Below the pieces are notes generated by a model. It was not told the origin of the DNA. It worked only from the letters and a program-made list of their open reading frames with translations, and did no database searches. Below, in pieces: positions 19,292 to 58,928 of a stretch of DNA of 64,000 nucleotides. The stretch covers positions 819,379 through 883,378 of the forward strand of contig NW_003314324.1 in NCBI RefSeq assembly GCF_000143415.4. Direction: 5' to 3'. The DNA is from Selaginella moellendorffii. Its lineage: Eukaryota > Plantae > Lycopodiophyta. The position numbers were made by a program, and so were the translations under genes. Within the stretch, counting starts at the first letter, position 1, and each line of letters starts with the position of its first letter.

Positions 19292-20472
<1,181 letters not shown>

Positions 20473-32434: not shown

Positions 32435-32619
32435 AGTAAAGGAAATGCCAAGATAAATTCACATTGAGCTGATCAAACACTCATATGAAAGATCCTAAGG
32501 ATAGTGAGAAACCAATTTGAGATATGTTTTACCTCCTCATTGGGCATGTTTATCTTTGTTCTTTGTTTGACTTGGGTTTGAGACCAAACTTTATACCATG
32601 TAGACTTATATCCCAAGTT

Positions 32620-32750
32620 TATGTCCAGAAGAAGAAGTGTCATTAATTCAAAGGTCGAACCTTCAATTTTCTTGGGATATTTAGAAGGTATGAAAGAATA
32701 TCGTTATTCTCTCAAGAGTTGGAAAGATGGGATGTGCTCTTTGATAAGAG
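32620..32750 (+). mobile_element. Degenerate Ty1/Copia fragment (post-integrase SH3-like region)
   Basis: Translates to FLGYLEGMKEYRY...DVLFDK, matching the Copia FLGYSxxxKGYR...RDVxFDE motif; no intact ORF. Confidence 0.6.
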
Positions 32751-39523: not shown

Positions 39524-42374
39524 ATACCCAGTGTTGGGTGATGAACTGACCACTGGGAAATCCAAGACTAGAGTGAATACGGACCGACAAGTGGGGTAGT
39601 TTCGTGAAGTGTTCAAGAGTCGGCTCTAGTTCCCCCAGGAGGTTGACTGGCCGATGCTCCCAGTCCAAATGTGGGTGGCATTACCTACTTGGATACCAGG
39701 CATGGCTCAACAAAACCTCGCTCTAAGCCCATGGCTAGAGCACCCAAAGGCGGAAGGCGGGGAGAGTACCCAGGAGGCCTGCATAAGGTCACGGTGTTCC
39801 AAAATGCTGTCCTAAAGTCCCAGGCTATGGAAAGGAAGAGCAGTGATCCTTGGGTGTGGTGACCAATGACACGGTCATATGGTGAGGAAGTCCCAGAGGA
39901 CAGTGGGACTTGGTGGTCGGGCCTGTGGGCCTTGATCCAGTGGCAGTGTTGGTGAACATGGCGATGGACAGAAAAGGATCTTGGTGGGGACTGTTAAAGG
40001 GATATTGGGGAAGGCTGTTCCCCATACTTGCAGGCATCTTAAGGATGCTAAGGAGTGGACCTAGGATGGTCATTCATGGACAGATGGCCCAGTCTTTGAG
40101 AGATGGGACGGTGATGCAGGTGGTGTTGGACCACCTGTGTGACCAAGGGTAATGGGCATGGCCTTAGCGTAACGGGCCAGTATGTTGGTGGTACCTTGGG
40201 GTGTCGGTCATGAGATCGGACACATGGAGCACTTGGACCAAGTGCAAAAGTTGAGTGGCGGGGATGCCATTCTCAGGGCTAACAAGCCTGAGTCTGAAAT
40301 AGGACTTATGGAGGTTGTGAGTGAGACTCCTCCAAGTGGTCGGAGGTGTGGTTAAGTGACTAAAGTAGAATGGAAAAATTAGTTGCTTACACCATTTCCT
40401 TGCGTTAGGCCACCGGTATGCTGAAATAGCACCAAACTCCGTTTGGCTCTGTTTTGCATGCTGGTCCTGGCATTAGGATGCTGATTGCTCTAGGACTGTT
40501 CCAAGTCGCTCCGAGCTCCTGTCCCTTCGCTCCTTGGGCTGTATACTCGGGAGTTGCTCTGTGGTCTAGTTCCATCACTCCTTGGCTCCAAGCTTGGGGG
40601 TTTGGCACCGTTCCTTTGTTCAGTGGCCCAAGGCCCTAAACTTCGGGTTCCACACCACTGTCCTTTGGACACGTGGCACAAAGAGGGTTTAGGTTCCGCT
40701 TTGTGGTATTATCCTATAGTAAATCACCATAGGATAAAGGGTAAAAACCATGTGCGCTACATAGACTCTCTTTGTAGCCTCGTCCTCTTTGTGCTATTGA
40801 ATTTTTTGGTTGTGATCTTCTTAGCCTAAACTCACCTCATTGGCTGTATTGATAGCCAATGGTTTTGCAATATCTATGCTGCATTGTGTGTTGGACCTTG
40901 TGGCCTAAGTTTTGGAATTTTTTTCAGGTCTTTAGCATCCATCATTCACCTAGTGTTGTCCATTTGTGTACTTGTCACTTCTTCGATGCTCGGAGAGATT
41001 TGTATAAGTATCGAATTTGTTTCTATAGACATAGATGAGTCGCGACTTTGTTCCTGATCTGGGTGTGGTGCTTTATCACCATACTTGTTGCATCCAGCTT
41101 TTCCGTGGCATACTCGACCATCCTCCCCATGGATGATGGGTTTATGTGTGTGTATTTTGAAGCAACCATAACAACTTGAAAACAATTATGCACCTATTAG
41201 CAAGCAAAAGATCATCCTGATTTTTCCAAAAACCATGGAAACCAAGGCTGGTCCAAACATGTGATTCCTACCTAGATCTTGAACAACAACTCTTACAAGA
41301 TTGAAATGTTGATTAGGTCATAAAGAAACAAACTACACTTATAGTGTTTCTGTCTATTGTTGCCCACTAAGCTGTGTTGGTATTTCCAAACCATCATAAC
41401 AATTTTTCTCAAAACCATAGCTACCAACACTCTTCTAAACCTAGCCCAAACTGAAAATGGACGCCAAATGGAGGTTGGGAAATCCTTATATATTGTGGAC
41501 CCACCAAAGGGTGGGTAAATACAAATGTATAAAAATTCAAAATATTCTCAATACATAACTTAAATGAGTTAATACCTTTTTGGTATTAAAGTAAGATTAT
41601 TTATATAAAAAGGGATAAAGGTATAACAATCCAAAACACCTTTTTTCTCAGGAAAATCAAAAAAAGATGAACCAAACACTTTGTAAAAAATTTTGCAAAA
41701 TGGAAAGCTGGGAGTGCATTGTGTAGTGTGACATAATGGACATGTCCAAGACATGCACATTATCATGGGCAACCTAGTTGCCACAGCTCAGAGAAAAGCC
41801 ACCCTCGTACCACAATTTAACACAAAGATAAAAAATAATAATAATTACCTTACCAGTACACACATTTTGTAAATTCTGTGGGAGGCAAGTTCTTCGTCCA
41901 GTTCATGCTGAATAGTATGAGTTATTGGTAGTACCCAAGAATTCATCTCATAAGGGTTTCATGTGGCAACCATAAAGGACAATTGGCGCTGATCTAAAGA
42001 AGTCTCCAAGGCAAAAACTTGGGCATGAGAAAGACTGCAAAAAGATATTGAGATTCGCAAACATAAAAAATCGTGCCAATTGTGCCTTTGGCCAATATAA
42101 TTCACAGCCAATTGCCCTTCAGCTGCGTGACAGCTGTTGCTCCCCCAGCTCATCGCCCAAGATACATGTTGCACTTTGTTCTTCTCTGGCAAAATGGTCT
42201 GCAGGCCTCCTATTGGTCAGAACAAAAGCAGCCCCGGTCCAAAGATCTGACAGTTGAAGTAAGATTTGATTGGTTCATTGCATAGAAAATCTCTAAAAGA
42301 AAACAAATAATATATAAAGAGTAAAATAAGGTTACAAATAAATAAATTACCAACACCAATAGATATGATCATTC

Positions 42375-43790
42375 CTACGATCCCAGAGTAGTATACTTGC
42401 GGAAGAATTCATGGTTCACGAGCTTCTTCATATGGATTGCAGGTAGCGAGATGAGCAGCCGCCGGTGCCTTCCCCCTCTCGGGCTGGGGAGAATCACCGT
42501 GACACCGTTCCCATACCACGGCGGCTGCATTACCAGAGAGTAGTGTACAGTCTTTCCCCATCCAAAATCAACGCTGTACACAGGGAAACTGTGCAAGCTC
42601 GTGCTGTAGATCCCAGTCCCCGACACAAAATCACCATTTAGATTGATCTTCCTTCCTCTGCCCAGCTCCATCTCCATCCAATCGATGGCGGATTGCATGT
42701 GTTCTTGAGTGGTGCTTAGGATATCCTCGTGGAAGAGCCTCGCAGCGTAGGAGAGATGGCGGGATTTGATGTCCCCGGCCTTGGCAGTGAGGCATGGCGA
42801 GTGGATGCTATTGCCAATGTACGAGGCTGGGACTGGGGGGTTCCAGCGGTTCTTGCCCTTGAGAGAGATCGCATAGACGTAGCTTGTGATGATCGAGTCT
42901 TGGAGATCTCTGGCCTCGGTGATGGCTTTCCAGATCATGGCGCTCGTTGCCTCGAACGAGGTTGGAGGGCGGCCATAGCTGTACGGACCACTGTGAACGT
43001 CTCGGATAAGATCGTCGACTTGGTCAGGATCCATCTCAAACATCTTCACGACGTACTCGCACGTTACGTCGGTTGCTTTGTCCGAGTGAGTGTTATAGAT
43101 CGGAGAGGAGTAGTAGTCGCGGACTGGCAGAATGATCGCTGGGGGCTGCCTGGCCTGGAAAATGTTAGAGGCAAAAACCGGAGGGCTCAAAAGCGGCAGG
43201 CCTCGGTGGATTTCGGACCAAGCATTCACAAACGCAAAGTTTGAGGATCCATCTAGCACCACTTCGGCCACTAAGATCCCCAATGCAATCCCACCACACT
43301 TGAACTTCGTCACCTAGATTCAGGAATTCCATGAATATTTAGGAATTAACTGCGATATCAAGAAACCTGCCTGAACTTTGAAGATCGGAGCAGTGTCTGG
43401 ATCCGTGATGGCCACTTCCGAAGGATTGAGATGCTGCTCGATGGAGCAAAACGCCATATTTTTCCAATCGCTGAAGCTGGCGTCGGGGGCACTCGCCTCC
43501 ACAAACGAGACACCAGCGTCGTTGCAATCCACCTCCAGCTTGTGACCATCTTCCGCCCTGCGCACCCGCCCTGCCAAGACATAAAACGGGACAAGCACTC
43601 TGGACAGCGAAGCTCTCAAGCTCTCGACAAGATCATCCCTGCTAGATGGTGGGAAATAGTAGACTTGCTTGGTATAATTCTCAAAGGAGATGTGGAAGTC
43701 GAGATTGGAGAGCTTGTGAATCCGGGGCTGTGGAGTTGGAGTTTCGGGCTTGACAGTCCAAGACCCCAACACCGTCACAACACTAGCCAT
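42375..43790 (-). CDS. BAHD acyltransferase-family protein, copy 1 (intact; EXXXD in place of HXXXD)
   Basis: LSNLD, LSRVLVPFYVLAGR, VDCNDAGV.FVEA, Q|VTKFKCGG, AEVVLDG, YIGN, DFGWG; intron 43314-43370. Confidence 0.92.
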
Positions 43791-44536
43791 GGTTGATCAT
43801 AGGAACACACACAAACGTAATATATATATATATATAGCAAAGTTTGTACAGTTATAAAATCTTAAAGGTAAGGGTATTTATATTTATTGTTTTATCTTGA
43901 ATTTAGTTTTACATTTTTATTAGTTATAACAATCATTTAAATAATGGGTTTAAAGTAAAAAATGATACGGGATAGAGCTAAAGAGCCAATCCAGCTTTTC
44001 CTACATGCATTCTTCCAGAACAAAGAAGAGCATTCCCTTTCGTAGTCCAAGGCCCACGCGAAAGAAACCAATGGCCTAATGAAGAGGTTAAGGGCAAGCC
44101 CGTACTGAACTAGTACAATCTGAAGGACTTTTTTGTCCCACGTATACAGGTTTCTTCAGAACTGTACAGACCACGTTAGCCACGTGGGTTTATCAATAAG
44201 ATTCTTACCAAGAACTAAACACAGTTGCCAATGGTGCGATCACGTGAAGACCAGGGAATATAAAGTTTAAACAATAGAAATTAGATGCGAACTCACAAAG
44301 CTATGAGAGCTGTAGCTCTGGAAAAGCATCAGATGGAAGAACTGAAAGCTGTTTCCCGTGTACCACAACCATCACCTCTAATAACTCCTCGCAGCATCGC
44401 ACTAGGGCAGATTACTTACAACTTGCAATATCGTACTCGTCCTCCCTGCCTGCAAGTGGGCAGCCAGTTGAGATTATTCTGCCCTTGTGAAAAGTGTGCA
44501 CATCCTTTCCTGTGACGTGGAGAGGATCAAATACAA

Positions 44537-44610
44537 TTCCGTTGCCGGGATTTGAACCAGGGTCGCCTGGATGAAAGCCAGGCATCCTGACCGGAATAGA
44601 CGACGACGGA
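44537..44610 (-). tRNA. tRNA-Glu(UUC)-like gene, probably degenerate
   Basis: TCCGTCGTCGTCTATTCCGGTCAGGATGCCTGGCTTTCATCCAGGCGACCCTGGTTCAAATCCCGGCAACGGAA: perfect anticodon stem CCTGG/CCAGG around TTC and a B-box GGTTCAAATCC. One mismatch each in the acceptor and T stems; no T4 terminator. Confidence 0.8.
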
Positions 44611-44656
44611 TTAGAGGCCTCAGCTAAAATAATAGTACTTGTATTATCAGATTGCT

Positions 44657-46154
44657 TCACCAGAAGACGTAAGATTGATCGAAGTGTCCCTTCCTACAAG
44701 CACAGTACAAAGAGGCTCTGAGCGATTTTAGATTTTGATGGGAGTAAGTACCCGTCTCGTCCGGAATAGATTGGCGAATAGTTGTAGATCAATAGCTGCT
44801 CTTCTTCTTCCCAAGAAGCTGTGTGGCTTGACTTCAGAGCCTCGCTACTCAGACAAACAGTCGACAGTTTATCCTGTCTAATGAGAAGGTGAAGAGAATT
44901 ACCTGACGAAGAAGCTCGCAGCGCTCTGTGTAATTCGAACGGCATCCGGAGAGTGAGGTATTCCTTCGTATCCCCATTCGAAAGCATTCTTCTGCAAAAT
45001 CGAGAGAATATCTAAACAAAGAGGTGAAAAACGAGAAAAGCTCTACCTCGGGATGCCATTGCACACTAGTTACTGGATACTTGCGTCCTTCAATCGTCGA
45101 AATATATATCTGAAAATCCAAAGGAACTGATGGCTCAAGAGATTTGGCACCGAAAATGTTACCTTTCCATTCAGGTCAGGAGTTGTAGTTAGCACGTCAA
45201 AGAAATCTCGAAGGCTCTGTGTGTCTCTCCAAGTCTGTGGAGATAGACCTTTCTGCAATCCAAGCCAAAGAAATGAGAAGTAGAAAACACAAAGTGCTGA
45301 GAACCTTACAACGTGATTCTGCATTGCAAGCTTCTCGTGCTCCACCTTATCCAGAATGTCCTTAGGAAACCTGGACAAAGAACACTTCACAAGCACATAC
45401 AAAGAACTGACTCGTTACCAGGTAAACATGCTGCGCCCTTTGGCCCAGTCGCCCACGAAGTTTAGCTCTCCAGCAGCTTTGTGTGCGTTGTAATCGTCCA
45501 GGATGGAATGGTTGCCACTGACGATCACGGCTAGAAGTTCCAGACCCAAGCACGTCCCAAACACGGGAAAATAATCTCCCTTATCATTTGCTTCCAGTGC
45601 CCTCTACAAGATCAAACTAAACAATCAAGACTCTAGTTGCAAAGTCACTAGCATGAATACTCCTGGAAAAAACAATGGACGAAGAACGAACAAGAAGCAT
45701 TCCAAAGCTAAAGCAAGAGGGAAGAACACAAACCTTGAAGAGGAACTCGCTGGCGCGGTAGTAGGGACCATCTTGCAAGCTTGCACTCCCACCAGCGAAC
45801 AAAATGCCATTGATCAGCGAGAATTTCTGAGCAAACAAATAAGGGCAAAGAAATTTAGCTCATGGAAGTTACCTTCGCTAGCGTCTCCCAAGGCTCGTTG
45901 TAAAGCAAAGGAACGGCGCGAGCGCCCCCGGCCTCGACGAATTTCACATACGAGGCAGCGATGTAAGATATGTTGGAGCGCCTGGGATCGCCGGGCTCCA
46001 GCCTGTTGATGTAGCTCCTGTCATCGCCATCGCCGGGCTGAGTGAGAATCCCTATCAGCGGCCGCTTCTCTCGGGATTCTTCGGGTAGCTGGATGATCCT
46101 AGCGGCGGCGATCGCAGCGAGCGCGAGGAAGATCGCTACAATGGCTCCTGCCAT
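44657..46154 (-). CDS. GGH: Gamma-glutamyl hydrolase (peptidase C26), intact, 9 exons
   Basis: Signal peptide; RPLIGILTQPGDG, SYIAASYVKFVEAGGARAVP, catalytic GTCLG and QWHPE|KNAFEW; last exon GKGHFDQSYVFW* ends at 44657. Confidence 0.92.
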
Positions 46155-46199
46155 GGCGACCCTAGCGTAAGAGCCCTAATTCGCGGGAAATTCTCGTCC

Positions 46200-46600
46200 G
46201 CGTCAATTGCTAGAGCAGCGGACACACACAAGAAACAAGCAAAGATCGAGCGCCGCCAAGAGCCAGAAGAAGTAGTTCATATGGTGATCGATCCGCCACC
46301 CTTGCTCGTGATCTTCTCCACCGCAAGAACAAGAACACTACTCCCTAAATCCTTGCGTGCGTTTCCAACCCCGCCACAACCATGGCCCTTTGCAAGCAGG
46401 TCAACTCGCTCTGTTGACCGATCAACATGCGAAGAACTTGGACGAGAAGCCTCTCGTCAAGCGGCACTGTGAGAATGACGGCGATGGTGTCACATGCCGC
46501 GAGCGATGCCGGGGGCACTTTGAAGCCGGAGATGCGGTTGCGCATTTCTTGCCCCTACTGCACGAACAGCGTCGAGGTCTGGATGAAAACGGTGGAGAAG
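46200..46600 (-). pseudogene. 3' fragment of an NPF/PTR transporter
   Basis: Homologous to 62110-62710 (RNRISGFKVPPASLAA..TIAVILTVPL.ERLLV) with internal deletions and no 5' part. Confidence 0.85.
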
Positions 46601-46619
46601 CATTCTGCTGCGAGCGGCG

Positions 46620-47880
46620 CTGCTAAGATCGCACTGGCGGCGGCATTGTGCTGCAAGCAGCAGTGCTAGATCGCAGCAGCAGCGGCCGCGATCGCAGCTC
46701 GAGGAGATCTAGCCGGTAAGAGACTGATATTGCTGGCGTGACTCGATGCAGTGAGATTTTGGCTTCTGATCTTCAAACCAGGACGGAATGAAGCCTAGGG
46801 TGTCTGCTGTCCCGTGGAAGACACCCCAGCATCCATTGCCCCTGATATCCTCACAGCACTCAAACTTGCCAACAAACTGATACACGAGTCTAGCTGCCTG
46901 GAGTAGAACTTCGGATAATCCAAAGTTTCTGGGAAAGGTGTTTATAGTCGTCACTTCAGTCTAGATTTAAGAAACTTCCGGACTTTCTAGCAGAGCAGAG
47001 CCATTGCCTCACAGATAAATCCGAGGTACAACTTGTAACCATGGTATGTGCGACTTCTCTGTCCCCCTTTCCATTTGTGATGTTGTTAATCCCCCTACAA
47101 CAACCTCTACGTAGGCCAAATAGCAATGTACGTGACCTATCAAGTAAGACCGGCTTCTCAAGCCAGCTCTTGAATGTATGTTTTTCTGCTTGTTTAAACA
47201 AAATGCAACCTCTATGTGCATGTGCACTTGCAAAAATGAAACAATCAAAACATAGCTATTTATAAATGTTCTTGGCTGTGTATGGTTCCACAGAGTAGAG
47301 TCAGACAATCCAAGAGCCATAATTCTTTCTGGAAAGGGCATGATTGCTTTGGCTCGCCAACATGGCGCGAGAGAAACCCTGGTGATTCTCCAACGATATC
47401 CTTGTGATTAGAGCGCTGTATGTCACTACATATAAGAATGCCCACTTGAGGCTGGCCAAAACGCTGGGAAAGAAGAAATGTTCCTTGCGCGTAATCTTGT
47501 CTCACAATCGAATAGATGCCACGATTCAATGGATATGAAATGCAGCCACGTGTTGCAAGTTGGTTTCCCCCATAGCACCAATGAGCTTCTTCCATTCCAG
47601 CCAGTGTGCCCATTTTTAATTGGCCATCCAAACATCAACGTAATTTTAACCCCAACCATAGGAGCACCAAATTCTTCCATATAATCTTTTATAGAGAGTT
47701 GCTATACATTTGGTCCAGATGCAATGAACCAAGCTGGTAGGCATCAAGTAAAACACAATGTCCTCGAGGTATGTATCGGAAATATAGACTTTTACATTTT
47801 TAAGGATTAAATCCTTGTATTTAAAATAAGATTATTCTATTAAAAATCCTTCGTTCAAGAAAAAATTACCAACACCAACT
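46620..47880. repeat. Unidentified spacer X, duplicated at ~57868-58915; may contain a decayed gene fragment
   Basis: Both copies start CTGCTAAGATCGCACTGGCGGCGG and share broken ORF pieces such as YSIVRQDYAQGTFLLSQRFGQPQVG. Confidence 0.75.
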
Positions 47881-47904
47881 CTCAAACCCCATATGAACCA
47901 GTGA

Positions 47905-49318
47905 TCATTCCAGAGTAGTATACTTGCGGAAGAATTCATGGTTCACAAGCTTCTTCATATGGATTGCAGGCAGCGAGATGAGCAGCCGCCGGTGCCTTCC
48001 TCCTCTCGGGCTGGGGAGAATCACCGTGACACCGTTCCCATACCACGGCGGCTGCATTACCAGAGAGTAGTGTACAGTCTTTCCCCATCCAAAATCAACG
48101 CTGTACACAGGGAAACTGTGCAAGCTCGTGCTGTAGATCCCAGTCCCCGACACAAAATCACCATTTAGATTGATCTTCCTTCCTCTGCCCAGCTCCATCT
48201 CCATCCAATCGATGGCGGATTGCATGTGTTCTTGAGTGGTGCTTAGGATATCCTCGTGGAAGAGCCTCGCAGCGTAGGAGAGATGGCGGGATTTGATGTC
48301 CCCGGCCTTGGCAGTGAGGCATGGCGAGTGGATGCTGTTGCCAATGTACGAGGCTGGGACTGGGGGGTTCCAGCGGTTCTTGCCCTTGAGAGAGATCGCA
48401 TAGACGTAGCTTGTGATGATCGAGTCTTGGAGATCTCTGGCCTCGGTGATGGCTTTCCAGATCATGGCGCTCGTTGCCTCGAACGAGGTTGGAGGGCGGC
48501 CATAGCTGTACGGACCACTGTGAACGTCTCGGATAAGATCGTCGACTTGGTCAGGATCCATCTCAAAAATCTTCACTACGTACTCGCACGTTACGTCGGT
48601 TGCTTTGGCCGAGTGAGTGTTATAGATCGGAGAGGAGTAGTAGTCGCGGACTGGCAGAATGATCGCTGGGGGCTGTCTGGCCTGGAAAATGTTAGAGGCA
48701 AAAACCGGAGGCCTCGAAAGCGGCAGGCCTCGGTGGATTTCGGACCAAGCATTCACAAACGCAAAGAATGAGGATCCATCCAGCACCACTTCGGCAGTTA
48801 AGATCCCTAATGCGATCCCACCACACTTGAACTTCGTCACCTAGATTCAGGAATTCCATGAAATATTGAAGAATTAAATGCGATATCAAGAAACCTGCCT
48901 GAACTTTGAAGATCGGAGCGGTGTCTGGATCCGTGATGGCCACTTCCGAAGGATTGAGATGCTGCTCGATGGAGCAAAGCGCCATGTTTTTCCAATCGCT
49001 GAAGCTGGCATCGGGGGCACTCGCCTCCACAAACGAGACGCCAGCGTCGTTGCAATCCACCTCCAGCTTGTGACCATCTTCCGCCTTGCGCACTCGTCCT
49101 GCCAAGACATAAAACGGGACAAGCACTCTGGACAGCGAAGCTTTCAAGCTCGCGACAAGATCATCCCTGCTAGATGGCGGGAAATAGTAGACTTGCTTGG
49201 TGTAATTCTCAAAGGAGATGTGGAAGTCGAGATTGGAGAGCTTGTGAATCCGGGGTTGTGGAGTCGGAGTTTCTGGCTTGACAGTCCAAGACCCCAACAC
49301 GGTCACAACACTGGCCAT
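47905..49318 (-). CDS. BAHD acyltransferase-family protein, copy 2 (intact; TAEVVLDG)
   Basis: Near-identical to copy 1 with the same two-exon structure; DFGWG present. Confidence 0.92.
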
Positions 49319-49730
49319 TATTGACGAGAGAACATACGTACAACCTAAAATATATATAACACCAAATCTTTCGTGGGTTCCAGGAAATGCAAAGCCTTGA
49401 AAAAATGCGTGCGAACTATGCGTGGCGACGCACGTGGTCCATAGCCACGAACACAGATCACGACAAGGACAAAGTCAGCTTTTTGTGTACACTGTGTACA
49501 CGTTTTGCGCGTTCACTGTGCCTCCTCCGTGCGGGCCTAACCATGTAGAAGCAGCTGCGGTCTGCCCCTCTCTGCCGTGTCTAAGTCGACATCTCCCCTC
49601 TGGCCGGGCAAGGGTTCAATAGTATCGTATTTGATCATGAAATTTTTTCAGTGGAGAAACATGACGTCGACGGATGCATGATCTATTGTGGCGCAGTCGG
49701 GTAGTCTGGGTTAGACGACAACGGATTCTT

Positions 49731-51066
49731 CCCAAGTGGCTTGACTTCAGAGCCTCACTACTCAGAGTCGACTGTTTCCATGAAGATGAAGGGACTAACC
49801 TGACGAAGTGCTCTGTGTAATTCGAATGGCATCCGGAGAGTGGGGTATTCCTTCGTTTCAAATGCATTCTTCTGCAAAATCGAGAGAATATAAAAACAAA
49901 GAGATGAAAAGCGAGAAAAGCTTTTGTCATTGCACACCAGTTATTGGATAAAGCACATCAAACTGAGGTTCCATTCCATCCGGGAACTCATCGACAAAGG
50001 CAAAATTCTTCTGGAATTTTGTCCTACCAACACGCTGGCGGATGTCCTGACCAAGGCTCTACCTTGTGTAAAGCATCAAGTCTTCCTAAAGACACTCAAG
50101 CTAGGTAATGGAAACCTTGAGGAGTGTGGGAAGCACAAGGTCCACATCACTAGCCACATCACATATCCTCACTAACCGTCAAGAGTTGCCACATCCTCTT
50201 AAAATTCCTAAATGCAGCTGCTTCCTACATTTCCATGGATCATCACTATAAACCCATACAATTAACCATGTATTAACCGTCATAACAATAACACAACACT
50301 GTTTCATAATACAACAAGACCTTTCTGCAATCCAAGCCAAAGAAGAAAACACAAACTAAACCTTAGAATGTGATTCCGCAAGCTTCTCGTGCTCCACCTT
50401 ATCCGGAATGCCCTTAGGAAACCTGGACAAAGAACATTTCACAAACACATACAAAGAACCGACTCGTTACCAGAACATGCTGAGCTCTTTGGCCCAGTCG
50501 CCCACGAAGTTTAGCTCTCCAGCAGCTTCGTGGTATGCGTTGTAATCGTTCAGGATGGAATGGTTGCCACTGACGATCACAGCTAGAAGTTCCAGACCCA
50601 AGCACGTCCTATCATTTGCTTCCAGTGCCCTCTACAAGATCAAAATAAACAATCAAATACTCTAGTTCCAAAGTGAATACTCCTGGACGAAGAACGAACA
50701 AGAAGCATTCCAAAGCTAAAGCAAGAGGGAAGAACAAAGAGAAACTCGCTGGCGCGGTACTTAGGACCATCTTGCAAGCTTGCGCTCCCACCAGCAAACA
50801 AGATGCCACTGATCAGCGAGAATTTCTGTGCAAAAAAATAAGCGCAAAGAAACTGGAAGTTACCTTTGCTAGCGTCTCCCAAGGCGGAACGGCGCGAGCA
50901 CCCCGGCCTCTACGAATTTCACATACCAGGCAGCGATGTAAGATATGTTGGAGCGCCTAGGACCGCCCGTCGATGTAGCTCCTCCCATCGCCATTGTCAG
51001 GCTGAGTGAGAATCCCAATCAGCGGCGCTTCTCCCGGGATTCTTCGGGCAGCTGGATGATCCCGGC
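49731..51066 (-). pseudogene. GGH pseudogene, copy 2 (no start or signal peptide, deletions, interrupted by Copia)
   Basis: Collinear with 44810-46100 but frameshifted, missing the HPE codons and the last exon. Confidence 0.88.
49951..50316 (+). mobile_element. 5'-truncated Ty1/Copia end: RNase H C-terminus, short polypurine tract and a ~190-bp 3' LTR (50125-50316)
   Basis: KHIKLRFHSIRELIDKGKILLEFCPTNTLADVLTKAL matches Copia RNase H; GAGGAG is followed by TG...CA; GGH sequence resumes at 50317; the insertion is absent from paralogue copy 4. Confidence 0.85.
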
Positions 51067-51109
51067 AATTTCCCGCGAATTAGGGTTCTTATGCTATGGT
51101 TTTTTCATT

Positions 51110-52792
51110 TCGCCATAGCCCCGTGTCAATTGCTAGAGCAGCGGACGCACACAAGAAACAAGCCAAGATCAGTGGCGACGAGCGCTGCCAAGAGCCAGAA
51201 GAAGTAGTCCATATGGTGATCGATCCAGCTCCCGCGTCTGCCACCCTTGCTCGTGATCTTCTCCACCGCACCAACAAGAACAACTCCCTAAAGCATTTGT
51301 AGCAAGCGACAGTGCACCGATCAAACTCCGCATTGCCTCGGGGGACTCCTTGTTGAAGAACTCGGTCCTCCCAGCAAACGCGAACACTCCAGCGGCGCCC
51401 ACTTGAAAATGCTGTGGCACCTGCCAGAGTATACTCACCTGGTGAACCATTGCGTGCGTTTCCACCACCCCCGCCACAACCATGGCCAAAAGCCCCAGGC
51501 CCATCCTTTGCAAGCCGGTCAACCCACTCTGTTGACCGGTCAACATGTGAAGAACTGGGACGAGAAGCCTCTCGTAGAGCGGCACTGTGAGAATGACGGC
51601 GATGGTGTCAAATGCCGCGAGCGATGCCAGGGGGACTTTGAAGCCGGATATGCGGTTGCGCATTTCTTGCCCCTGCTGCACGAACAGCGTCGAGGTCTGG
51701 ATGAAAACGGTGGAGAAGATGATGCTCGTCCCCCACACTGGCATCAAGTGCAGGATGATCTTCACCTCCTCGATCTGCGTTACCGTGCATAACCTCCATC
51801 CCGTCGGTGGTGAGTTCCCAAACGCTGTTTGCTCATCGCGAGCGATGGCTGCCGCCTTGTCGAGAAATCCAAATCCAGCAGTGTGCTGAATCTGCTGACT
51901 TCCTGGAATGCTGGAACTCTCCCCTTGTAGCTCATAGAGGGTTGCATTTGCATGCTCGACTTCTATCCTTGCACTTCTGTTTCTGGCAGCGGCAACGAAA
52001 ACTTGTGCCACCCTGGTTAGCGGGCTCCCACCCGGTTGCTTGTGCTTGTACCGCGGCCAGCCCATGAGAAAGATCATGGCGGACGCCGTGACCGCCACTG
52101 TGGGGATGGCGAACCCGAGCGGCCAGCTTACTTCCTGCTGGACATATACCAGAGCTGTTCCCGCAATCAGACCTCCGATGTTGGTGAAGTAGCTCCAGTT
52201 GAAGAAGCTGGCCTTGTTGCTTGCTGGATCATCAGACTCTTCCAGTTGAAAAGCACCGAATGATGAAATGCAAGACCTTGGTCCACCGGATCCCACGGCT
52301 ATGACGTATAACGCTGTGTAAAGCAAGGCCGGGTTTACTGTTTTGCTGCAAGTATGTGATCCAGTGCTATGGCATGTAGGGTGTAGCAAAGTTGACAAGG
52401 TTAGCAAGATCATACCCTGTGAGTGTAACGTTGGGCAAAGGTGAGTCTAGAGTGTCTCTTTTTCTTACCAGCAAGTAGATGCCGAAAAAGGCGTTGATCG
52501 TCCGAAACTGGCCGAGGTAAGAGTCTGCAAGGAATCCACCCAGTAGAGGGCTAAGATTACAGGTTCCCATCCAGTTTGAGACTGCGTTTGCCGCACTGGC
52601 TTTGGATACGTGAAGCTTGCTAGACATGTAGATCACCATGTTTGCTACAATGGCGTAGTATGCGAGCCGTTCCATGGAGAGAGAAACTAGAAACGCAGAG
52701 AAATTAAGAAAGCCATTCAATCCTTATGGGAACCGAAGTGTACCAATAATGAATTTGCAAGCCCACCATCCAGCAGCTCCATTGTCGGCCAT
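51110..52792 (-). pseudogene. NPF/PTR (POT) transporter copy with a C-terminal frameshift, probable pseudogene
   Basis: Three exons as in the 62081-63791 copy, but an 11-bp deletion at ~51281 shifts the frame in the last transmembrane region; also in-frame deletions and PQYFL changed to PQHFQ. Confidence 0.8.
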
Positions 52793-53761
52793 TTAGGATA
52801 AACAAAGCTGAACCCTAAGAACATCTGCTCAGCTCCGGTGGTTTTCACCCAAATCAACTTGCTGTGAATGGAAGTTCTTCATTGTGGATTGCATCTCAAG
52901 TTCAACCTTTTGAAAATTTCTGATCATTGGCTTCCACGGTGTTAGGTTCTTCAGGAAGGAAGACGAGGCGGCAGTCCTGTGGTTCAAAATCTATTGCGCA
53001 AAATTGAATTTTTCTACTTCGTTGAAACTCGTTTTGCCCCTATTTTTCTCAAATACTTTGTAATTTCTAATATTACGTTTGTAGAACTTATATGCAAATG
53101 AAACAAAATGCAAAAAAAATTGCAAAATGGAAAGCTGAGAGTGCATTGTGTAATGCAACATAATAGACATGTTCAAGACATGCACATTGTCATCCTTGTT
53201 GCCACAGCTCAGAGAAGAGCAACCCTCATAGCACAATTTAACACAAAGATAAACTTACCAATGCACATATATTGTAAATTCTGTGAGAGGTAAGAAGAGA
53301 GTAATAATTGGTAGTACCTAAGAATTCATCTCATAAGGGTTTCATCTGGCAACCATAAATAACAATTGGTGCTGATATAATCTTCTAAGTAGTCTCCAAG
53401 GCAAAAACTTGAGCATGAGAAAAACTGCAAAAGTTATTGAGATTCGCAAACATAAAAAAATGTGTCAATTACATTTTTGGCCAATATAACTCAAGCCCAA
53501 TTGCCCTTGAGCTGCATGTTCCCCCCCAACTCATCAGAGTAAAAAACATATTTACCCAGTTACCCCCAAGATCCATGTTGCAATTTGTTCTTCTCTAGCA
53601 AAATGGTCTGCAGGCCTTCTATTGGCCAAGAGCAAAAGACTTCACTCTGGGCCTGAGATCTGACAGTTGATTGGTTCATTGCTGAAAATGTATAGAAATC
53701 TCTAAAAGTTACAAATAAATAAATACAAATTCTCAAACTATGTATGAACCAGTGAATATTC

Positions 53762-55143
53762 CTACGATCCCAGAGTAGTATAGTTGCGGAAGAATTCATG
53801 GTTCACGAGCTTCTTCATATGGATTGCAGGTAGCGAGATGAGCAGCCGCCGGTGCCTTCCTCCTCTCGGGCTGGGGAGAATCACCGTGACACCGTTCCCA
53901 TACCACGACTGCATTACCAGAGAGTAGTGTACAGTCTTTCCCCATCCAAAATCAACGCTGTACACAGGGAAACTGTGCAAGCTCGTGCTGTAGATCCCAG
54001 TCACCGACACAAAATCACCATTTAGATTGATCTTCCGTCCTCTGCCCAGCTCCATCTCCATCCAATCGATGGCGGATTGCATGTGTTCTTGAATGGTGCT
54101 TAGGATATCCTCCTGGAACAACCTCGCAGCATAGGAGAGATGGCGGGATTTGGCCTTGGCAGTGAGGCATGGCGAGTGGATGCTGTTGCCAATGTACGAG
54201 GCTGGGACTGGGGGGTTCCAGCGGTTCTTGCCCTTGAGAGAGATCGCATAGACGTAGCTTGTGATGATCGAGTCTTGGAGATCTCTGGCCTCGGTGATGG
54301 CTTTCCACATCATGGCGCTCGTTGCCTCGAACGAGGTTGGAGGGCGGCCATAGCTGTACGGACCACTGTGAACGTCTCGGATAAGATCGTCGACTTGGTC
54401 AGGATCCATCTCAAACATCTTCACTACGTACTCGCACGTTACGTCGGTTGCTTTGGCCGAGTGAGTGTTATAGATCGGAGAGGAGTAGTAGTCGCGGACT
54501 GGCAGAATGGGGGCTGCCTGGCCTGGAAAATGTTAGAGGCAAAAACCGGAGGCCTCGAAAGCGGCAGGCCTCGGTGGATTTCGGACCAAGAATTCACAAA
54601 CGCAAAGAATGAGGATCCATCCAGCACCACTTCGGCCGTTAAGATCCCTAATGCGATCCCACCACACTTGAACTTCGTCACCTAGATTCAGGAATTCCAT
54701 GAAATATTGAAGAATTAAATGCGATATCAAGAAACCTGCCTGAACTTTGAAGATCGGAGCAGTGTCTGGATCCGTGATGGCCACTTCCGAAGGATTGAGA
54801 TGCTGCTCGATGGAGCAAAACGCCATGTTTTTCCAATCGCTGAAGCTGGCATCGGGGGCCTCCACAAACGAGATGCCACCGTCGTTGCAATCCACCTCCA
54901 GCTTGTGACCATCTTCCGCCCTGCGCACCCGCCCTGCCAAGACATAAAACGGGACAAGCACTCTGGACAGCGAAGCTCTCAAGCTCGCGACAAGATCATC
55001 CCTGCTAGATGGCGGGAAATAGTAGACTTGCTTGGTGTAATTCTCAAAGGAGATGTGGAAGTCGAGATTGGAGAGCTTGTGAATCCAGGGCTGTGGAGTC
55101 AGAGTTTCGGGCTTGACAGTCCAAGACCCAACACCCTAGCCAT
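53762..55143 (-). pseudogene. BAHD copy 3, frameshifted pseudogene
   Basis: 7-bp deletion at ~54508 in exon 2 plus several small in-frame deletions relative to copies 1, 2 and 4. Confidence 0.88.
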
Positions 55144-55892
55144 ATAGGAACATACACAAACTTAATATATATATTACCTATAAGATTTCATGTTTGTTTA
55201 TATATATATAACGAGTAAAGGTATTTATATTTATGGTTGCATTTTCATTAGTTATATTAATCATTTAAAATAGGGGTTTAAAGTAAAAAATGATACGGGA
55301 TTATACTGACAGAGCTAAAGAGCCAATCCAGCTTTTCCTACATGCATTCTTCCAAAACAAAGAAGAGCATTCTCTTTCGTAGTCCAAGGCCCACGCGAAA
55401 GAAACAAATGGCCTAATGAAGAGGTTAAGGGCAAGCCCGTACTGAACTAGTACAATCTGGAGGACTCTTTTGTCCGATGTAAGTAGTATACAGGTTTCTT
55501 CAGAACTGTACAGACCACGTTAGCCACGTGGGTTTATCAATAAGATTGTTACCAAGAACTAAACTCGATCGGACAGTTGCCAATGGTGCGATGACCAGCG
55601 AATATAGAGTTTAAACAATAGAAATTAGATGCGAACTCACAAAGCTATGGGTTCCACAGCGAGAGCTGTAGCTCTGGAAAAGCATCAGATGGAAGAACTG
55701 AAAGCTGTTTCCCGTGTACCACAACCATCACCTCTAATAACTCCTCTCAGCATCGTACCAGGGCAGATTACTTACAACTTGCAATATCGTTCTCGTCCTC
55801 CCTGCCTGCAAGTGGGCAGCCAGTTGAGATTATTCTGCCCTTGTGAAAAGTGTGCACATCCTTTCCTGTGACGTGGGGAGGATCAAATACAA

Positions 55893-55966
55893 TTCCGTTG
55901 GCGGCATTTGAACCAGGGTCGCCTGGATGAAAGCCAGGCATCCTGACCGGAATAGACGACGACGGA
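55893..55966 (-). pseudogene. Second, more decayed tRNA-Glu(UUC)-like copy
   Basis: Same as 44537-44610, but the 3' strand of the T stem has changed from CCCGG to GCCGC. Confidence 0.78.
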
Positions 55967-56012
55967 TTAGAGACCTCAGCTAAAATAACAGTAGTTTTAT
56001 TATCAGATTGCT

Positions 56013-56884
56013 TCACCAGAAGACGTAAGATTGATCGAAGTGTCCCTTCCTACAAGCACAGTACAAAGAGGCTCTGAGCGATTTTAGATTTTGATGGGAG
56101 TAAGTACCCGTCTCGGCCGGAATAGATTGGCGAATAGTTGTAGATCAATAGCTGCTCTTCTTCTTCCCAAGAAGCTGTGTGGCTTGACTTCAGAGCCTCG
56201 CTACTCAGACAAACAGTCCAGAGTTTATCCTGTTTAATGAGAAGGTGAAGAGAATTGCCCGACGAAGAAGCTGGCAGCGCTCTGTGTAATATGAACGGCA
56301 TCCGGAGAGTGAGCTATTCCTTCATATCCCCATTCGAAAGCATTCTTCTGTAAAATCGAGAGAATATCAAAACAAAGAGGTGAAAAACGAGAAAAGCTCT
56401 ACCTCGGGATGCCATTGCACACCAGTTACTGGATACTTGGGTCCTTCAATCGTCGAAATATATATCTGAAAATCCAAAGGAACTGATGGCTCAAGAGATT
56501 TGGCACCGAGAATTACCTTCCCATTCAGGTCAGGAGTCGTAGTTAGCACGTCGAAGAAATCTCTAAGGCTCTGTGTGTCTCTCCAAGTCTGTGGAGATAG
56601 ACCTTTCTGCAATCCAAGCCAAAGAAATGAGAAGAAGAAAACACAAAGTAAGTGCTGAGAACCTTACAATGTGATTCTGCATTGCAAGCTTATCGTGCTC
56701 CACCTTATCCAGAATGTCCTTAGGAAACCTGGACAAAGAACATTTCACAAGCACATACAAAGAACTGACTTGTTACCAGGTAAACATGCTGCACTCTTTG
56801 GCCCAGTCGCCCACGAAGTTTAGCTCTCCAGCAGCTTTGTGTGCGTTGTAATACTCGAGGATGGAATGGTTGCCACTGACGATC
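56013..56884 (-). pseudogene. GGH copy 3, 5'-truncated (lacks the first exons and the catalytic Cys)
   Basis: 3' exons are near-identical to copy 1; similarity breaks at ~56884, next to a 15-bp tandem duplication (CTAGTGGGATTAAAA x2). Confidence 0.88.
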
Positions 56885-56959
56885 CTAGTGGGATTAAAAC
56901 TAGTGGGATTAAAAATTATTAGTTAAGAATAATAATAGAAATAAAACTTACCTAGTTCA

Positions 56960-57800
56960 ACATATGTATATAATATATCAGTTAAAGTTTGTGTAGTACG
57001 ATTGGCTACCGGAACCATAAACATTCGATCTGAATCACGTTCAATTCCTCCAAAGACTCATTAACCTTCTACTCTTCTACCACAATTATATTTCTGCTTA
57101 CCAAACTTACTTTCATCAATTTCCACAATACTTCCTGGACCACCAATCTTTTGATTACCTCATTGTAATGTGATAATGCAAATATCACGACAAAAGTTGT
57201 ACCAATTTGTTATCGTGTGCTCACTTTTAATACTACACTCAATATGAGTTTAATCTTGTGGCATTTTAATGCACCAACAATACATCACTCTAAGCATTTG
57301 AGTAAATATGAGATTACTATTTGCAAACCATGTATTAGTTCTAAGAAATTTTGTGATATTGCAATTTTTACAATTCCACTTTAAACCATCTTTACAACCT
57401 TGATTATCATATCGATATCTCATTGGTCAATGACATCTTTCACATTCTCTCTCTTGTGGGAGAAGACCAACCGTAATACAAAAACTAAAAGAATTTACCT
57501 TACTATTAGTTCTCTCAATAATATTAGAAAAAGAAAGAATACTATCTTAAGCATGATTTACATATTCCAATCTAGCCATAATACTAAAGAGAATGAATAA
57601 AATAAGAAAGAAAATATAAGGAGCACAAACATAAAACACAATGAGGAAAGACCTAAACCAATCGTAGGTTATATACTTATAAATTATAGCCGTTCATTCA
57701 CTGGCTAATTATAAAATTATATAATTAAAATTTAACGTTACTAATTTAGAGTTAGTCGTTAAACATTTAGGGTGTAGAGCTGGGAATGACTAAGCGCGCC
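56960..57800 (-). mobile_element. Merlin / IS1595 (ISXO2-like) DNA transposon remnant
   Basis: Hand translation of ~57410-56975 gives DGLKWNCKNC..LRTNTWF..YCW..HTITNWYNFCRDIC..KIGGPGSIVEIDESKFGKQKYNCGRRVEG**VFGGIERDS..FMVPVANRT..TL, with in-frame stops. AT-rich; absent from the paralogous half. Confidence 0.85.
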
Positions 57801-58928
57801 ACGGAGGAAGCGAGGAGGCAACCACGTAAGAGTGAGGGGTGCTGTATTGTGCATTTCTTCCGCAGCACTGCTAAGATCGCACTGGCGGCGGCATTGTGCT
57901 GCAAGCAGCAGTGCTAGATCGCAGCAGCAGTGGCCGCGATCGCAGCTCGAGGAGATCTAGCCGGTAAGAGACTGATATTGCTGCCTGTGACTCGATGCAG
58001 TGAGATTTTCTTCAAACCAGAACGGAATGAAGCCTAGGGTGTCTGCTGTCCCATGGAAGACACCCGAGATCCTCTTCTCACAACACTCAAACTTGCCAAC
58101 AAACTGATACACGACTCTAACTGCCTGAGGTAGAACTTAGGATAATCCAAAGGTTCTGGGAAAGGTGTTTATAGGCCAAATAGCAATGTACGTGACATAT
58201 CAAGTAAGACCGGCTTCTCAAGCCAGCTCTTGAATGTTAAGAATGAAACAATCAAAGCATAGCTTTTTATAAATGTTCTTGGCTGTGTATGGTTCCAGAG
58301 AGTAGAGGTCAGACAGTCCAAGAGCCATAATTCTTTCTGGAAAGGGCATGATTGCTTTGGCTCGTCAACATGGCGCGAGAGAAACCCTGGTGATTCTCCA
58401 ACGATATCCTTGTGATTAGAGCGCTGTATGTCACTACATATAAGAATGCCCACTTGAGGCTGGCCAAAACGCTGGGAAAGAAGAAATGTTCCTTGCGCGT
58501 AATCTTGTCTCACAATCGAATAGATGCCACCATTCGATGGATATGAACTGCAGCCACGTGTCAATTTGCAATTTGCCATTTCGTTTTCTCCCATAGCACC
58601 AATGAGCTTCTTCCCTTCCAGCCAGTGTGCCCGCCATCAAACATCAAACATCAACGTCATTTTAACCCCAACCATAGTTAGATGATGATGACACCAAATT
58701 CTTCCATATAAATATTTGTTGTCTTTTATAGAGATTTGCTATACATTTGGTCCAGATGCAATGAACCAAAGCTGGTGGGCAATGTCCTCGTGGACGGTGA
58801 ATCAGAAATATAGACTTTTACATTTTTAAGGATTTAATCCTTGTGTTTAAAATAAGATTACTTATCAAAACAAATCCTTAGTTCAAGAAAAAAATTACCA
58901 ACACCCCATAGATATGAATAGATCATTC

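What the first reader, a model, noticed from the sequence alone, without database searches (positions are those of the whole stretch)
43245..43280. All four BAHD copies replace the catalytic His of HXXXD with Glu (A-E-V-V/I-L-D-G)
Seen: after VTKFKCGGIALGIL, the HXXXDG position reads EVVLDG or EVILDG in every copy (codon GAA at 43263-43265 in copy 1), while DFGWG and the other motifs are intact. His to GAA needs two base changes and cannot be reversed by C-to-U editing. Known: this His is the general base for acyl transfer in BAHDs, and some BAHD-fold proteins do non-canonical jobs (CER2-like proteins, coumarin synthase COSY). Inference: either new chemistry using Glu, or a non-catalytic binding/scaffold role that was still amplified to three intact copies.
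Basis: partly seen in the sequence, partly recalled or inferred. Interest (0 to 1): 0.8.

Follow-up and report, generated by a model that had tools for sequence, protein, structure and literature searches.

The report
Glu-for-His BAHD acyltransferase family, Selaginella
A tandem family of Selaginella BAHD acyltransferase genes carries glutamate where nearly all relatives have the catalytic histidine, yet the genes are transcribed, correctly spliced and kept by selection, so they are working proteins with an untested chemistry or role, not dead genes.

Summary
The window is Selaginella moellendorffii nuclear DNA with four tandem BAHD genes on the minus strand: three intact and one pseudogene (copy 3). 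Each has codon GAA (Glu157) where AtHCT has catalytic His153. Asp161, DFGWG and 27 of 29 near-invariant BAHD residues are kept.

The genes are not decaying:
- Pairwise dN/dS among intact copies is 0.15-0.23.
- RNA contigs from four studies show copy 4 with its 58-nt GC-AG intron removed in frame and GAA unchanged.
- Copy 3 shows what decay looks like: two frameshifts and 3 synonymous against 11 nonsynonymous private changes.

The swap is older and wider than this array. Glu also occurs in a 62%-identical paralogue (codon GAG, synonymous sites saturated, omega about 0.11), in three more Selaginella lineages and in one Adiantum (fern) protein. All fall in one 99/99-supported clade. A His-bearing Selaginella subclade is nested inside it, implying one gain plus a reversal, or about five parallel gains.

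The function is untested. My preferred reading is that Glu acts as the base or acceptor anchor in an otherwise canonical active site (about 45%). A CER2-like non-catalytic role is the main rival (about 30%).

I found no description of a plant EXXXD BAHD clade. Two other first-stage notes report the same swap elsewhere in this genome.

The parts
42375..43790 (-). BAHD copy 1, intact (452 aa, = XP_024545617). Exon 1 is 43790-43371, a 57-nt GC-AG intron is 43370-43314, exon 2 is 43313-42375.
   Evidence: (PF02458 on both exons).
43263..43265 (-). Codon GAA = Glu157 at the catalytic-His position in copy 1. Asp161 is at 43251-43253 and DFGWG at 42555-42569.
47905..49318 (-). BAHD copy 2, intact (451 aa, = XP_024545542). 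Exon 1 is 49318-48899, a 58-nt GC-AG intron is 48898-48841, exon 2 is 48840-47905. Glu157 codon GAA is at 48790-48792.
   Evidence: A transcript contig in run X6 ends in this copy's private 3' end (47882-47911).
53762..55143 (-). BAHD copy 3, a pseudogene. It has deletions of 10 nt (after 55133), 6 nt (54860), 7 nt (54510), 9 nt (54153) and 3 nt (53910). The GAA codon is still present at 54631-54633.
   Evidence: Private changes are 3 synonymous against 11 nonsynonymous. NCBI model P0002 reads through the intron.
58929..60345 (-). BAHD copy 4, intact (452 aa, = XP_024545541). Exon 1 is 60345-59926, a 58-nt GC-AG intron is 59925-59868, exon 2 is 59867-58929. Glu157 codon GAA is at 59817-59819.
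   Evidence: RNA contigs of runs X1, X2, X6 and X10 span about 58846-60351, skip exactly 58 nt, and have 0 mismatches in three of the runs.
42367..60345 (.). Tandem array. The BAHD units start 5.2-5.9 kb apart and are embedded in a repeat of about 11 kb that also duplicates an NPF/PTR2 transporter gene.
   Evidence: repeat families D1-D9; PF00854 on 62081-63409.

Best explanation
These are functional, selectively maintained members of an old lycophyte/fern branch of the BAHD acyltransferase family, in which the general-base histidine of HXXXD is replaced by glutamate.

Shown here:
- The fold is a complete, confidently modelled BAHD fold.
- All other hallmark residues are kept: Asp161, Asn308, Thr378 (= AtHCT Thr369) and DFGWG.
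- The genes are transcribed and spliced in frame.
- Both recent and ancient paralogues evolve under purifying selection.
- Glu itself is preserved with both of its codons.

Inferred: the carboxylate of Glu157 takes over the job of the imidazole in an acyl-CoA-dependent transfer. It would either abstract the acceptor's proton or hold a protonated amine acceptor in place. The proteins would then remain enzymes, probably with a shifted acceptor class (cationic or amine acceptors are my guess) or a shifted pH optimum.

The name 'shikimate O-hydroxycinnamoyltransferase' given by automatic annotation is very unlikely to be right. The Arg356 'handle' of HCT is Asn364 here, and Trp371 is Leu380.
For: 1. 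Position. The alignment to AtHCT is gap-free and puts Glu157 on His153. The AF2 model with a 92-row alignment has pLDDT 94.7 and pTM 0.93. Residue 157 sits at the end of strand 149-156, just before helix 162-176, as in canonical BAHDs. The best structural matches are HCT structures, TM 0.83-0.87.

2. The rest of the site is intact. The window family keeps 27 of 29 near-invariant BAHD columns; the exceptions are H157E and the conservative R292K. P0007 keeps 28 of 29. The median for 92 BAHDs is 28.

3. Column 157 is the only column that separates all Glu rows from all His rows, so there is no sign of a general remodelling.

4. Selection. dN/dS is 0.15, 0.23 and 0.18 among copies 1, 2 and 4, with Fisher p 5e-8 to 7e-4. 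Against the P0003 gene, pS is 0.72 (saturated), dN is 0.27-0.29 and omega about 0.11. That gene uses GAG where the array uses GAA.

5. All 12 proteins of the 90% cluster, from both haplotype scaffolds, keep Glu. So do both alleles of the P0003 family and the listed members of the P0007 cluster that cover the motif.

6. Expression. Contigs from four runs of four studies lack the 58-nt intron and do not extend into the flanks.

7. In this clade the column reads only His or Glu, never a random residue, and the two alternate on the tree. That is what one expects if either residue can do the job.

8. Precedent from a related fold. Lewendon et al. [quoted passage not shown] The title was verified in a reference list; the content I know only from memory.
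Against: - No enzyme assay exists for any member.
- In characterised BAHDs the catalytic His has been shown by mutagenesis to matter for activity (as summarised in PMC5489795). To my memory the CAT His195Glu mutant kept only a tiny fraction of activity.
- The oxyanion-hole Trp371 of AtHCT is Leu here, although this is true of the His-bearing relatives too.
- Positions +8 and +9 after the Glu are Phe-Phe. In EPS1, bulky residues near these positions fill the acyl-donor site. This hint was read from sequence only.
- The family may belong to the Selaginella clade said to be sister to the non-catalytic CER2-LIKE proteins.
- One Glu lineage (P0010) looks frameshifted.
Confidence: 0.45

Rival explanations
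1. Non-catalytic BAHD-fold protein. It would be a structural cofactor or ligand-binding partner, as CER2-LIKE proteins are for the condensing enzyme KCS6, or a companion to a catalytic paralogue. Glu157 would be kept for structural or binding reasons.
For: - CER2-LIKE1 and CER2-LIKE4 lack the His, and CER2 function does not need it (PMC5489795). CER2 proteins act as structural cofactors of KCS6 independently of HXXXD (PMC12716393).
- In my trees the family sits in a 100/100 clade with fern proteins P0029 and P0040. These lack DFGWG, and P0029 scores as well against CsCER2 as against HCT.
- Purifying selection and expression fit this reading equally well.
Against: - DFGWG and 27 of 29 hallmark residues are kept, whereas Arabidopsis CER2-LIKEs lack DFGWG.
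- If the site were idle, varied residues would be expected. Instead it reads strictly Glu across saturated synonymous divergence, with a switch back to His in one subclade.
- P0001 scores 184 bits against AtHCT but only 72 against CsCER2.
- Whether this family is the Selaginella clade of Haslam et al. could not be tested.
Confidence: 0.3
2. Neofunctionalised enzyme with non-acyltransferase chemistry on the BAHD fold, for example a lyase, isomerase/lactonase or thioesterase. This would parallel EPS1 (His to Ser) or COSY.
For: - EPS1 shows that loss of the His can mark a new reaction. It also lost Trp371 (PMC11605079), and Trp371 is Leu here.
- Phe-Phe at +8/+9 resembles the bulky residues that fill the acyl-donor site in EPS1.
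- Atf1p keeps thioesterase activity when its His is mutated.
Against: - Trp371 to Leu/Phe and Phe at +9 also occur in the His-bearing relatives (P0004, P0008), so they are not tied to the Glu swap.
- No other column co-varies with residue 157.
- The His/Glu alternation argues for equivalent roles rather than new chemistry.
Confidence: 0.15
3. Young pseudo-enzymes on the way to decay, amplified by unequal crossing-over without function.
For: - Copy 3 is a pseudogene.
- The P0010 gene has a frame change and P0021 is a fragment.
- Tandem arrays do generate dead copies.
Against: - dN/dS is 0.15-0.23 among the intact copies, and omega is about 0.11 against a paralogue with saturated dS.
- Reading frames are intact on both haplotypes.
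- Spliced transcripts occur in four studies.
- Copy 3 provides an internal contrast, with 3 synonymous against 11 nonsynonymous private changes.
Confidence: 0.05

Closest known systems
HCT-type BAHD acyltransferases (AtHCT 5kjs/5kjt, SmHCT 6dd2)
   Same: - Closest solved relatives by sequence (E 5.6e-53, about 30% identity) and by fold (TM 0.83-0.87).
- Same two-domain fold.
- The same conserved motifs (QVTxFKCGG, xxxxDG, YxGN, DFGWG) and the Thr369 equivalent are kept.
   Different: - Catalytic His153 is Glu.
- The shikimate-binding Arg356 is Asn364.
- The oxyanion-hole Trp371 is Leu380.
The automatic name 'shikimate O-hydroxycinnamoyltransferase' is therefore not justified.
EPS1 (isochorismoyl-glutamate A pyruvoyl-glutamate lyase, Brassicaceae)
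   Same: A clade of BAHD-fold proteins with strict conservation of a non-His residue at the HXXXD histidine. It arose by tandem duplication next to a canonical paralogue, and Trp371 is also replaced (PMC11605079).
   Different: - EPS1 has Ser, not Glu.
- EPS1 is young and restricted to Brassicaceae.
- It belongs to a different BAHD clade.
- Here no other active-site change tracks the swap.
CER2-LIKE proteins (KCS6 cofactors in wax VLCFA elongation)
   Same: BAHD-fold proteins whose role does not need the His, and CER2-LIKE1/4 lack it. A large Selaginella clade is reported as their sister group.
   Different: - Arabidopsis CER2-LIKEs lack DFGWG and are very divergent.
- This family keeps DFGWG and scores far better against HCT than against CsCER2 (184 against 72 bits).
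Chloramphenicol acetyltransferase His195Glu mutant, and yeast HgAat1 (EXXXDA)
   Same: Same catalytic logic in a related acyltransferase fold. The Lewendon 1994 title reports a general-base role for Glu at the His position. A natural EXXXDA motif is noted in a Hanseniaspora Atf-type protein (PMC10070066).
   Different: The CAT case is an engineered mutant. The yeast case is a single uncharacterised protein noted in silico. Neither is a conserved plant clade.
Lycopodiaceae BAHDs (Phlegmariurus tetrastichus 'acetyl transferase 1' WOJ51791; Diphasiastrum complanatum paralogues)
   Same: Nearest His-bearing outgroups, 36-45% identical, in the same 100/100 clade.
   Different: They keep the canonical HXXXDG.

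Membership tests
BAHD acyltransferase superfamily (Pfam PF02458 Transferase) | Sequence match to the family profile over both domains. | tested here: met
   PF02458 hits: E 1e-26 on exon 1 (profile positions 3-140) and E 3e-45 to 5e-46 on exon 2 (profile positions 139-430).
BAHD acyltransferase superfamily (Pfam PF02458 Transferase) | Two-domain BAHD/CAT-like fold. | tested here: met
   AF2 model has pLDDT 94.7. Foldseek TM is 0.83/0.87 to AtHCT 5kjt, and all top hits are BAHDs.
BAHD acyltransferase superfamily (Pfam PF02458 Transferase) | HXXXD motif with catalytic His. | tested here: not met
   The motif reads E-V-V/I-L-D. Glu157 is on His153 of AtHCT and Asp is kept.
BAHD acyltransferase superfamily (Pfam PF02458 Transferase) | DFGWG motif. 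| tested here: met
   DFGWG is at residues 389-393 in all intact copies.
BAHD acyltransferase superfamily (Pfam PF02458 Transferase) | Acyl-CoA-dependent acyl transfer activity. | not testable with these tools
   This needs an enzyme assay.
HCT (shikimate/quinate hydroxycinnamoyltransferase), the name carried in RefSeq | Arg356 'handle', Thr369 and Trp371 (AtHCT numbering) together with the catalytic His. | tested here: not met
   Arg356 is Asn364, Trp371 is Leu380 and His153 is Glu157. Only Thr369 (= Thr378) is kept.
CER2-LIKE clade (BAHD clade II) | Phylogenetic placement with Arabidopsis CER2/CER2-LIKE1-4, or as their Selaginella sister clade. | tested here: inconclusive
   No CER2 sequence could be loaded into a tree. 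Indirect evidence: the family shares a 100/100 clade with fern proteins that lack DFGWG and score equally against CsCER2 and HCT. P0001 itself scores 72 bits against CsCER2 and 184 against AtHCT.
CER2-LIKE clade (BAHD clade II) | Absence of DFGWG (Arabidopsis members) and ER association with KCS6. | tested here: not met
   DFGWG is present. Localisation and KCS binding are not testable here.
EPS1-type lyases | Ser at the His position, and Brassicaceae-restricted clade Ib. | tested here: not met
   The residue here is Glu, not Ser. The clade is lycophyte/fern.

The most novel reading that the evidence does not exclude
A naturally evolved BAHD lineage, at least as old as the split between the Selaginella and fern lineages, that runs its chemistry with a carboxylate (Glu) instead of the imidazole general base, and that has switched between His and Glu more than once. 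It would be the first natural 'EXXXD' catalytic variant of the BAHD/CAT-type acyltransferase mechanism. It would probably be tied to a new acceptor class or a new reaction in lycophyte specialised metabolism.
Probability: 0.4. Interest if true: 0.75.

Novelty: new variant of a known kind. Interest (0 to 1): 0.6.

Why it matters
The HXXXD histidine is treated as the defining catalytic residue of BAHD enzymes. Large surveys delete sequences that lack it: a survey that began with 27 land-plant proteomes and was later extended to 218 species removed them by hand. The two well-studied groups of exceptions turned out to have unexpected roles: EPS1 is a lyase in salicylic acid synthesis, and CER2-LIKEs are chain-length cofactors of KCS6.

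This is a third His-less group. It is expressed, under selection, amplified in tandem, and otherwise canonical. That makes a clean test possible: can Glu serve as the base in this fold, and what does it buy the plant?

It also warns that the RefSeq names 'shikimate O-hydroxycinnamoyltransferase' and 'rosmarinate synthase' given to these Selaginella genes are not supported, and that motif-based filtering hides real biology in non-seed plants.

Tried and rejected
- **Single-sequence AF2 of P0001 failed** (pLDDT 31). I repeated it with a 92-row alignment.
- **Model coordinates are not exposed**. I could not measure which side chains surround Glu157 or whether the CoA tunnel is open. His311 and His381 are candidates from alignment only. 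His311 is also present in His-type Lycopodiaceae relatives, and His381 should point away from the site by strand alternation (an inference).
- **Word-index searches were of limited use.**
  - The exon 2 query gave 6 hits.
  - The profile query was capped at 8000 candidates and mostly returned angiosperm HCT-likes.
  - The Adiantum query found only itself and P0007.
  - I therefore could not show whether other ferns or other Selaginella species carry Glu.
- **Some genomic DNA was not retrievable.** Codons are known only for the window copies, P0003, P0010, P0163 and P0030.
- **E-monophyly is rejected.** The AU test gave p = 0.0002. I named the group after seeing the first tree, so this p is optimistic.
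- **I looked for residues co-varying with the swap and found none**.
- **Joined spliced models were not built or searched, per the operators' rule.** Exons were searched and analysed separately by reference. Full-length work used database proteins: P0001, plus P0196, P0191 and P0195, which a string comparison showed equal the two exon translations of copies 1, 2 and 4.
- **The 'decaying gene' reading was considered and rejected** for copies 1, 2 and 4.
- **C-to-U editing was set aside.** These are nuclear genes and the RNA shows GAA.

Full report
**What is there**

The window is nuclear DNA of Selaginella moellendorffii. The exon translations match RefSeq and GenBank proteins of that species at 98-100%. 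The scaffold is the 1,151,164-bp one, whose haplotype partner is GL377603.1.

Four BAHD genes lie head to tail on the minus strand, starting 5.2-5.9 kb apart. Each has two exons that both hit Pfam PF02458. A single 57/58-nt intron separates them, placed after '...PIFKVQ' and before 'VTKFKCGG'.

The intron has GC-AG borders. A GT donor six bases upstream would remove 'VQ', but it is not used. RNA contigs skip exactly 58 nt. Of the four equivalent placements of that joint, only GC..AG is a recognised splice-site type.

Copies 1, 2 and 4 are open (452, 451 and 452 aa). They equal XP_024545617, XP_024545542 and XP_024545541.

Copy 3 is a pseudogene. It has deletions of 10, 6, 7, 9 and 3 nt, and 3 synonymous against 11 nonsynonymous private substitutions.

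**The observation**

On the minus strand the codon GAA sits at these positions:

| Copy | GAA codon |
|---|---|
| 1 | 43263-43265 |
| 2 | 48790-48792 |
| 3 | 54631-54633 |
| 4 | 59817-59819 |

phmmer aligns the region to Arabidopsis HCT (5kjs) without gaps. 'qvtkfkcggialgiltaEvvlDgssffafvnaws' lies over 'qvtffkcggaslgvgmqHhaaDgfsglhfintws'. Glu157 is therefore on catalytic His153 and Asp161 on Asp157.

The same alignment maps other AtHCT active-site residues:
- Arg356 corresponds to Asn364.
- Thr369 corresponds to Thr378.
- Trp371 corresponds to Leu380.

DFGWG is intact.

**Is it a dying gene? No.**

Nei-Gojobori counts were computed exon by exon and summed, without joining the exons. They give dN/dS of 0.15 (copies 1-2), 0.23 (1-4) and 0.18 (2-4), with dS of 0.035-0.078. 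The deficit of nonsynonymous change is significant, with Fisher p between 5e-8 and 7e-4. Copy 3 is the internal control for what decay looks like in this array.

Contigs of four public runs from four different studies were laid on 58500-60800. They cover only 58846-60351 and skip the 58-nt intron. In three of the runs they match copy 4 with no mismatch over 1.4 kb, including the GAA codon.

The runs are labelled 'RNA?' only by guess. The missing intron and the absence of flanking sequence are what identify the contigs as transcripts.

A second family member is also transcribed. One X6 contig carries five differences that fit a copy-2-like gene. Another ends in the private 3' end of copy 2 at 47882-47911.

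**The swap is older and wider than the array**

I ran a full HMMER scan of 1.84 billion representatives with P0001 and read the His column in 155 proteins, the best hits plus earlier word-search hits. The counts were His 144, Glu 7, Arg 1, Ser 1 and 2 unaligned.

The Glu proteins are:
- the window family;
- P0003 (S. moellendorffii, 62% identical to P0001, same scaffold as the haplotype partner);
- P0007/P0158 (S. moellendorffii);
- P0010 (S. moellendorffii);
- P0021 (S. moellendorffii fragment);
- P0011 (Adiantum capillus-veneris KAI5074138, a fern);
- P0030 (a transcript contig of an unidentified organism, in a separate HCT-like clade).

For the P0003 gene (L001:10001-11439, a 44-nt GT-AG intron), synonymous sites are saturated against the window copies (pS 0.72). 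dN is 0.27-0.29, giving omega of about 0.11. Its Glu codon is GAG rather than GAA.

All 12 proteins of the family's 90% cluster, from both haplotype scaffolds, have Glu. So do both alleles of P0003 and the P0007-cluster members that cover the motif.

**Phylogeny**

Trees were built with the motif columns removed.

- All Glu rows except P0030 fall in one clade with 99/99 support. That clade sits within a 100/100 clade whose other members are His-type proteins of Lycopodiaceae (Phlegmariurus 'acetyl transferase 1', Diphasiastrum) and two fern-type proteins lacking DFGWG.
- Inside the Glu clade there is one His-bearing S. moellendorffii subclade (P0004, P0009, P0018, P0163, P0056) with 100/100 support.
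- That subclade is sister to Glu-bearing P0010 with 98/99 support.
- Holding the Glu rows together costs 47.8 log-likelihood units (AU p = 0.0002). I defined the group after seeing a first tree, so this p is optimistic.

P0010 (GAG) and P0163 (CAC) are neighbours about 3 kb apart on GL377714.1.

The fewest changes are one His-to-Glu gain and one reversal. The alternative is about five parallel gains. Each switch needs two nucleotide changes.

The flanks of the motif in the His subclade are of the clade's own type (LVTTHTLLDGSS against ILTAEVVLDGSS). This is not a patch converted from a distant His gene.

The P0010 gene itself has a frame change before DFGWG and keeps only 22 of 29 hallmark residues. 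It is probably decaying.

**State of the rest of the active site**

Of 29 columns that are at least 90% conserved in a 92-protein BAHD alignment, the window family keeps 27. The exceptions are H157E and the conservative R292K. P0007 keeps 28, and the median over all 92 rows is 28.

Column 157 is the only column that separates every Glu row from every His row. It is the nested His subclade, not the Glu lineages, that has lost Asn308 and the Thr369 equivalent.

The AF2 model built with the alignment is confident (pLDDT 94.7, pTM 0.93). Residue 157 lies between strand 149-156 and helix 162-176, as in canonical BAHDs. Foldseek returns HCT structures first, with TM 0.83-0.87.

**How it most likely works**

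Shown: these are expressed, constrained, otherwise canonical BAHD-fold proteins in which Glu is itself the selected residue.

Inferred: Glu157 replaces the imidazole. It would act as general base, or as an anchor for a protonated amine acceptor, in an acyl-CoA-dependent transfer. Three arguments support this:
- the intact remainder of the site;
- the fact that the column toggles only between His and Glu;
- the chloramphenicol acetyltransferase His195Glu study, whose title reports a general-base role for Glu. The title was verified; the details are from memory and the activity was, I recall, very low.

I put this reading at about 45%.

The main rival, at about 30%, is a non-catalytic role like that of CER2-LIKE proteins.
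- CER2-LIKE1 and CER2-LIKE4 lack the His, and CER2 works as a structural cofactor of KCS6.
- I could not test whether this family is that clade. It keeps DFGWG and is far closer to HCT (184 bits) than to CsCER2 (72 bits).

New chemistry of the EPS1 kind (His to Ser, Trp371 to Ser, a lyase) gets about 15%. Decay gets about 5%.

**What is known and what is new**

The genes are annotated in GenBank and RefSeq, but under names that the sequence does not support.

I found no paper in the searchable library that mentions their accessions or an EXXXD variant of plant BAHDs. The only 'EXXXD' mention is an in-silico note on a yeast Atf-type protein, HgAat1, with EXXXDA. A large BAHD survey removed HxxxD-less sequences by hand.

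Two other first-stage notes of this scan report the same swap on other pieces of this genome. One of them, the ENILD motif, is the P0010 gene that I examined.

I class the finding as a new variant of a known kind. It is a third His-less BAHD group, distinguished by Glu, by an otherwise intact site and by His/Glu switching.

**Limits**

- There is no biochemical evidence.
- Taxon sampling outside S. moellendorffii is thin: one fern protein and no other Selaginella species.
- The single Adiantum protein has not been checked for expression or intactness at the DNA level.
- RNA evidence comes from assembled contigs, which show presence and splicing but not expression level.

Noticed in passing
window 43314-43370, 48841-48898, 54xxx, 59868-59925: The single intron of all four copies is only 57/58 nt and has GC-AG borders (CAG|GCAGGT...TCTAG|GTG). 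RNA contigs confirm that it is used. The paralogue P0003 has a 44-nt GT-AG intron at the same phase-0 position after the conserved Gln.
   Followed up: yes
L003:5604-7038 and L003:10001-11546 (GL377714.1): A His-type BAHD (P0163, codon CAC) and a Glu-type BAHD (P0010, codon GAG) are tandem neighbours about 3 kb apart. In the tree, P0010 is sister to the His subclade that contains P0163. The P0010 gene changes frame between '...MELHLRAGD' and '...FPIYELDFGWG', so the old 457-aa model is patched and the gene may be a pseudogene.
   Followed up: partly
L002:294-1655 (Logan contig of SRR25391575): There is an independent Glu at the catalytic His position (LNEILADG, codon GAG). It occurs in an otherwise canonical (28 of 29 hallmark residues) HCT-like transcript from an unidentified organism, in a different BAHD clade.
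   Followed up: partly
window 51169-52720 and 62081-63716, minus strand: Two copies of an NPF/PTR2 (POT family, PF00854) transporter gene are duplicated with the BAHD array at a period of about 11 kb. The first copy's large exon ORF is shorter (414 against 442 aa) and differs near its C-terminus, so it may be damaged.
   Followed up: partly
window 16740-19061 (+) and 29537-32434 (+): Two long intronless pentatricopeptide-repeat (PPR) genes of 773 and 965 aa. PPR genes also flank the P0003 gene on the partner scaffold (L001).
   Followed up: no
window 32000-38000: A low-GC stretch (0.34-0.39, against 0.45-0.55 elsewhere) with no long ORFs. It lies directly after a GC-rich (0.61) PPR gene.
   Followed up: no
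window 2210-2878, 13322-14467, 19873-20472, 20702-21334: ORF fragments with Pfam hits to neutral invertase (GH100), the topoisomerase I N-terminal DNA-binding region, class III peroxidase and an AP2 domain. These are ordinary neighbouring genes, seen here as exon pieces.
   Followed up: no
P0004/P0199-P0205 cluster (S. moellendorffii, other scaffolds): The nested His-bearing subclade has lost other hallmark residues that the Glu lineages keep. The changes are D31Q, N308T, the Thr369 equivalent to Val, and DFGWG to EFGWG. Isoform X3 (P0004) lacks the DFGWG region altogether.
   Followed up: partly
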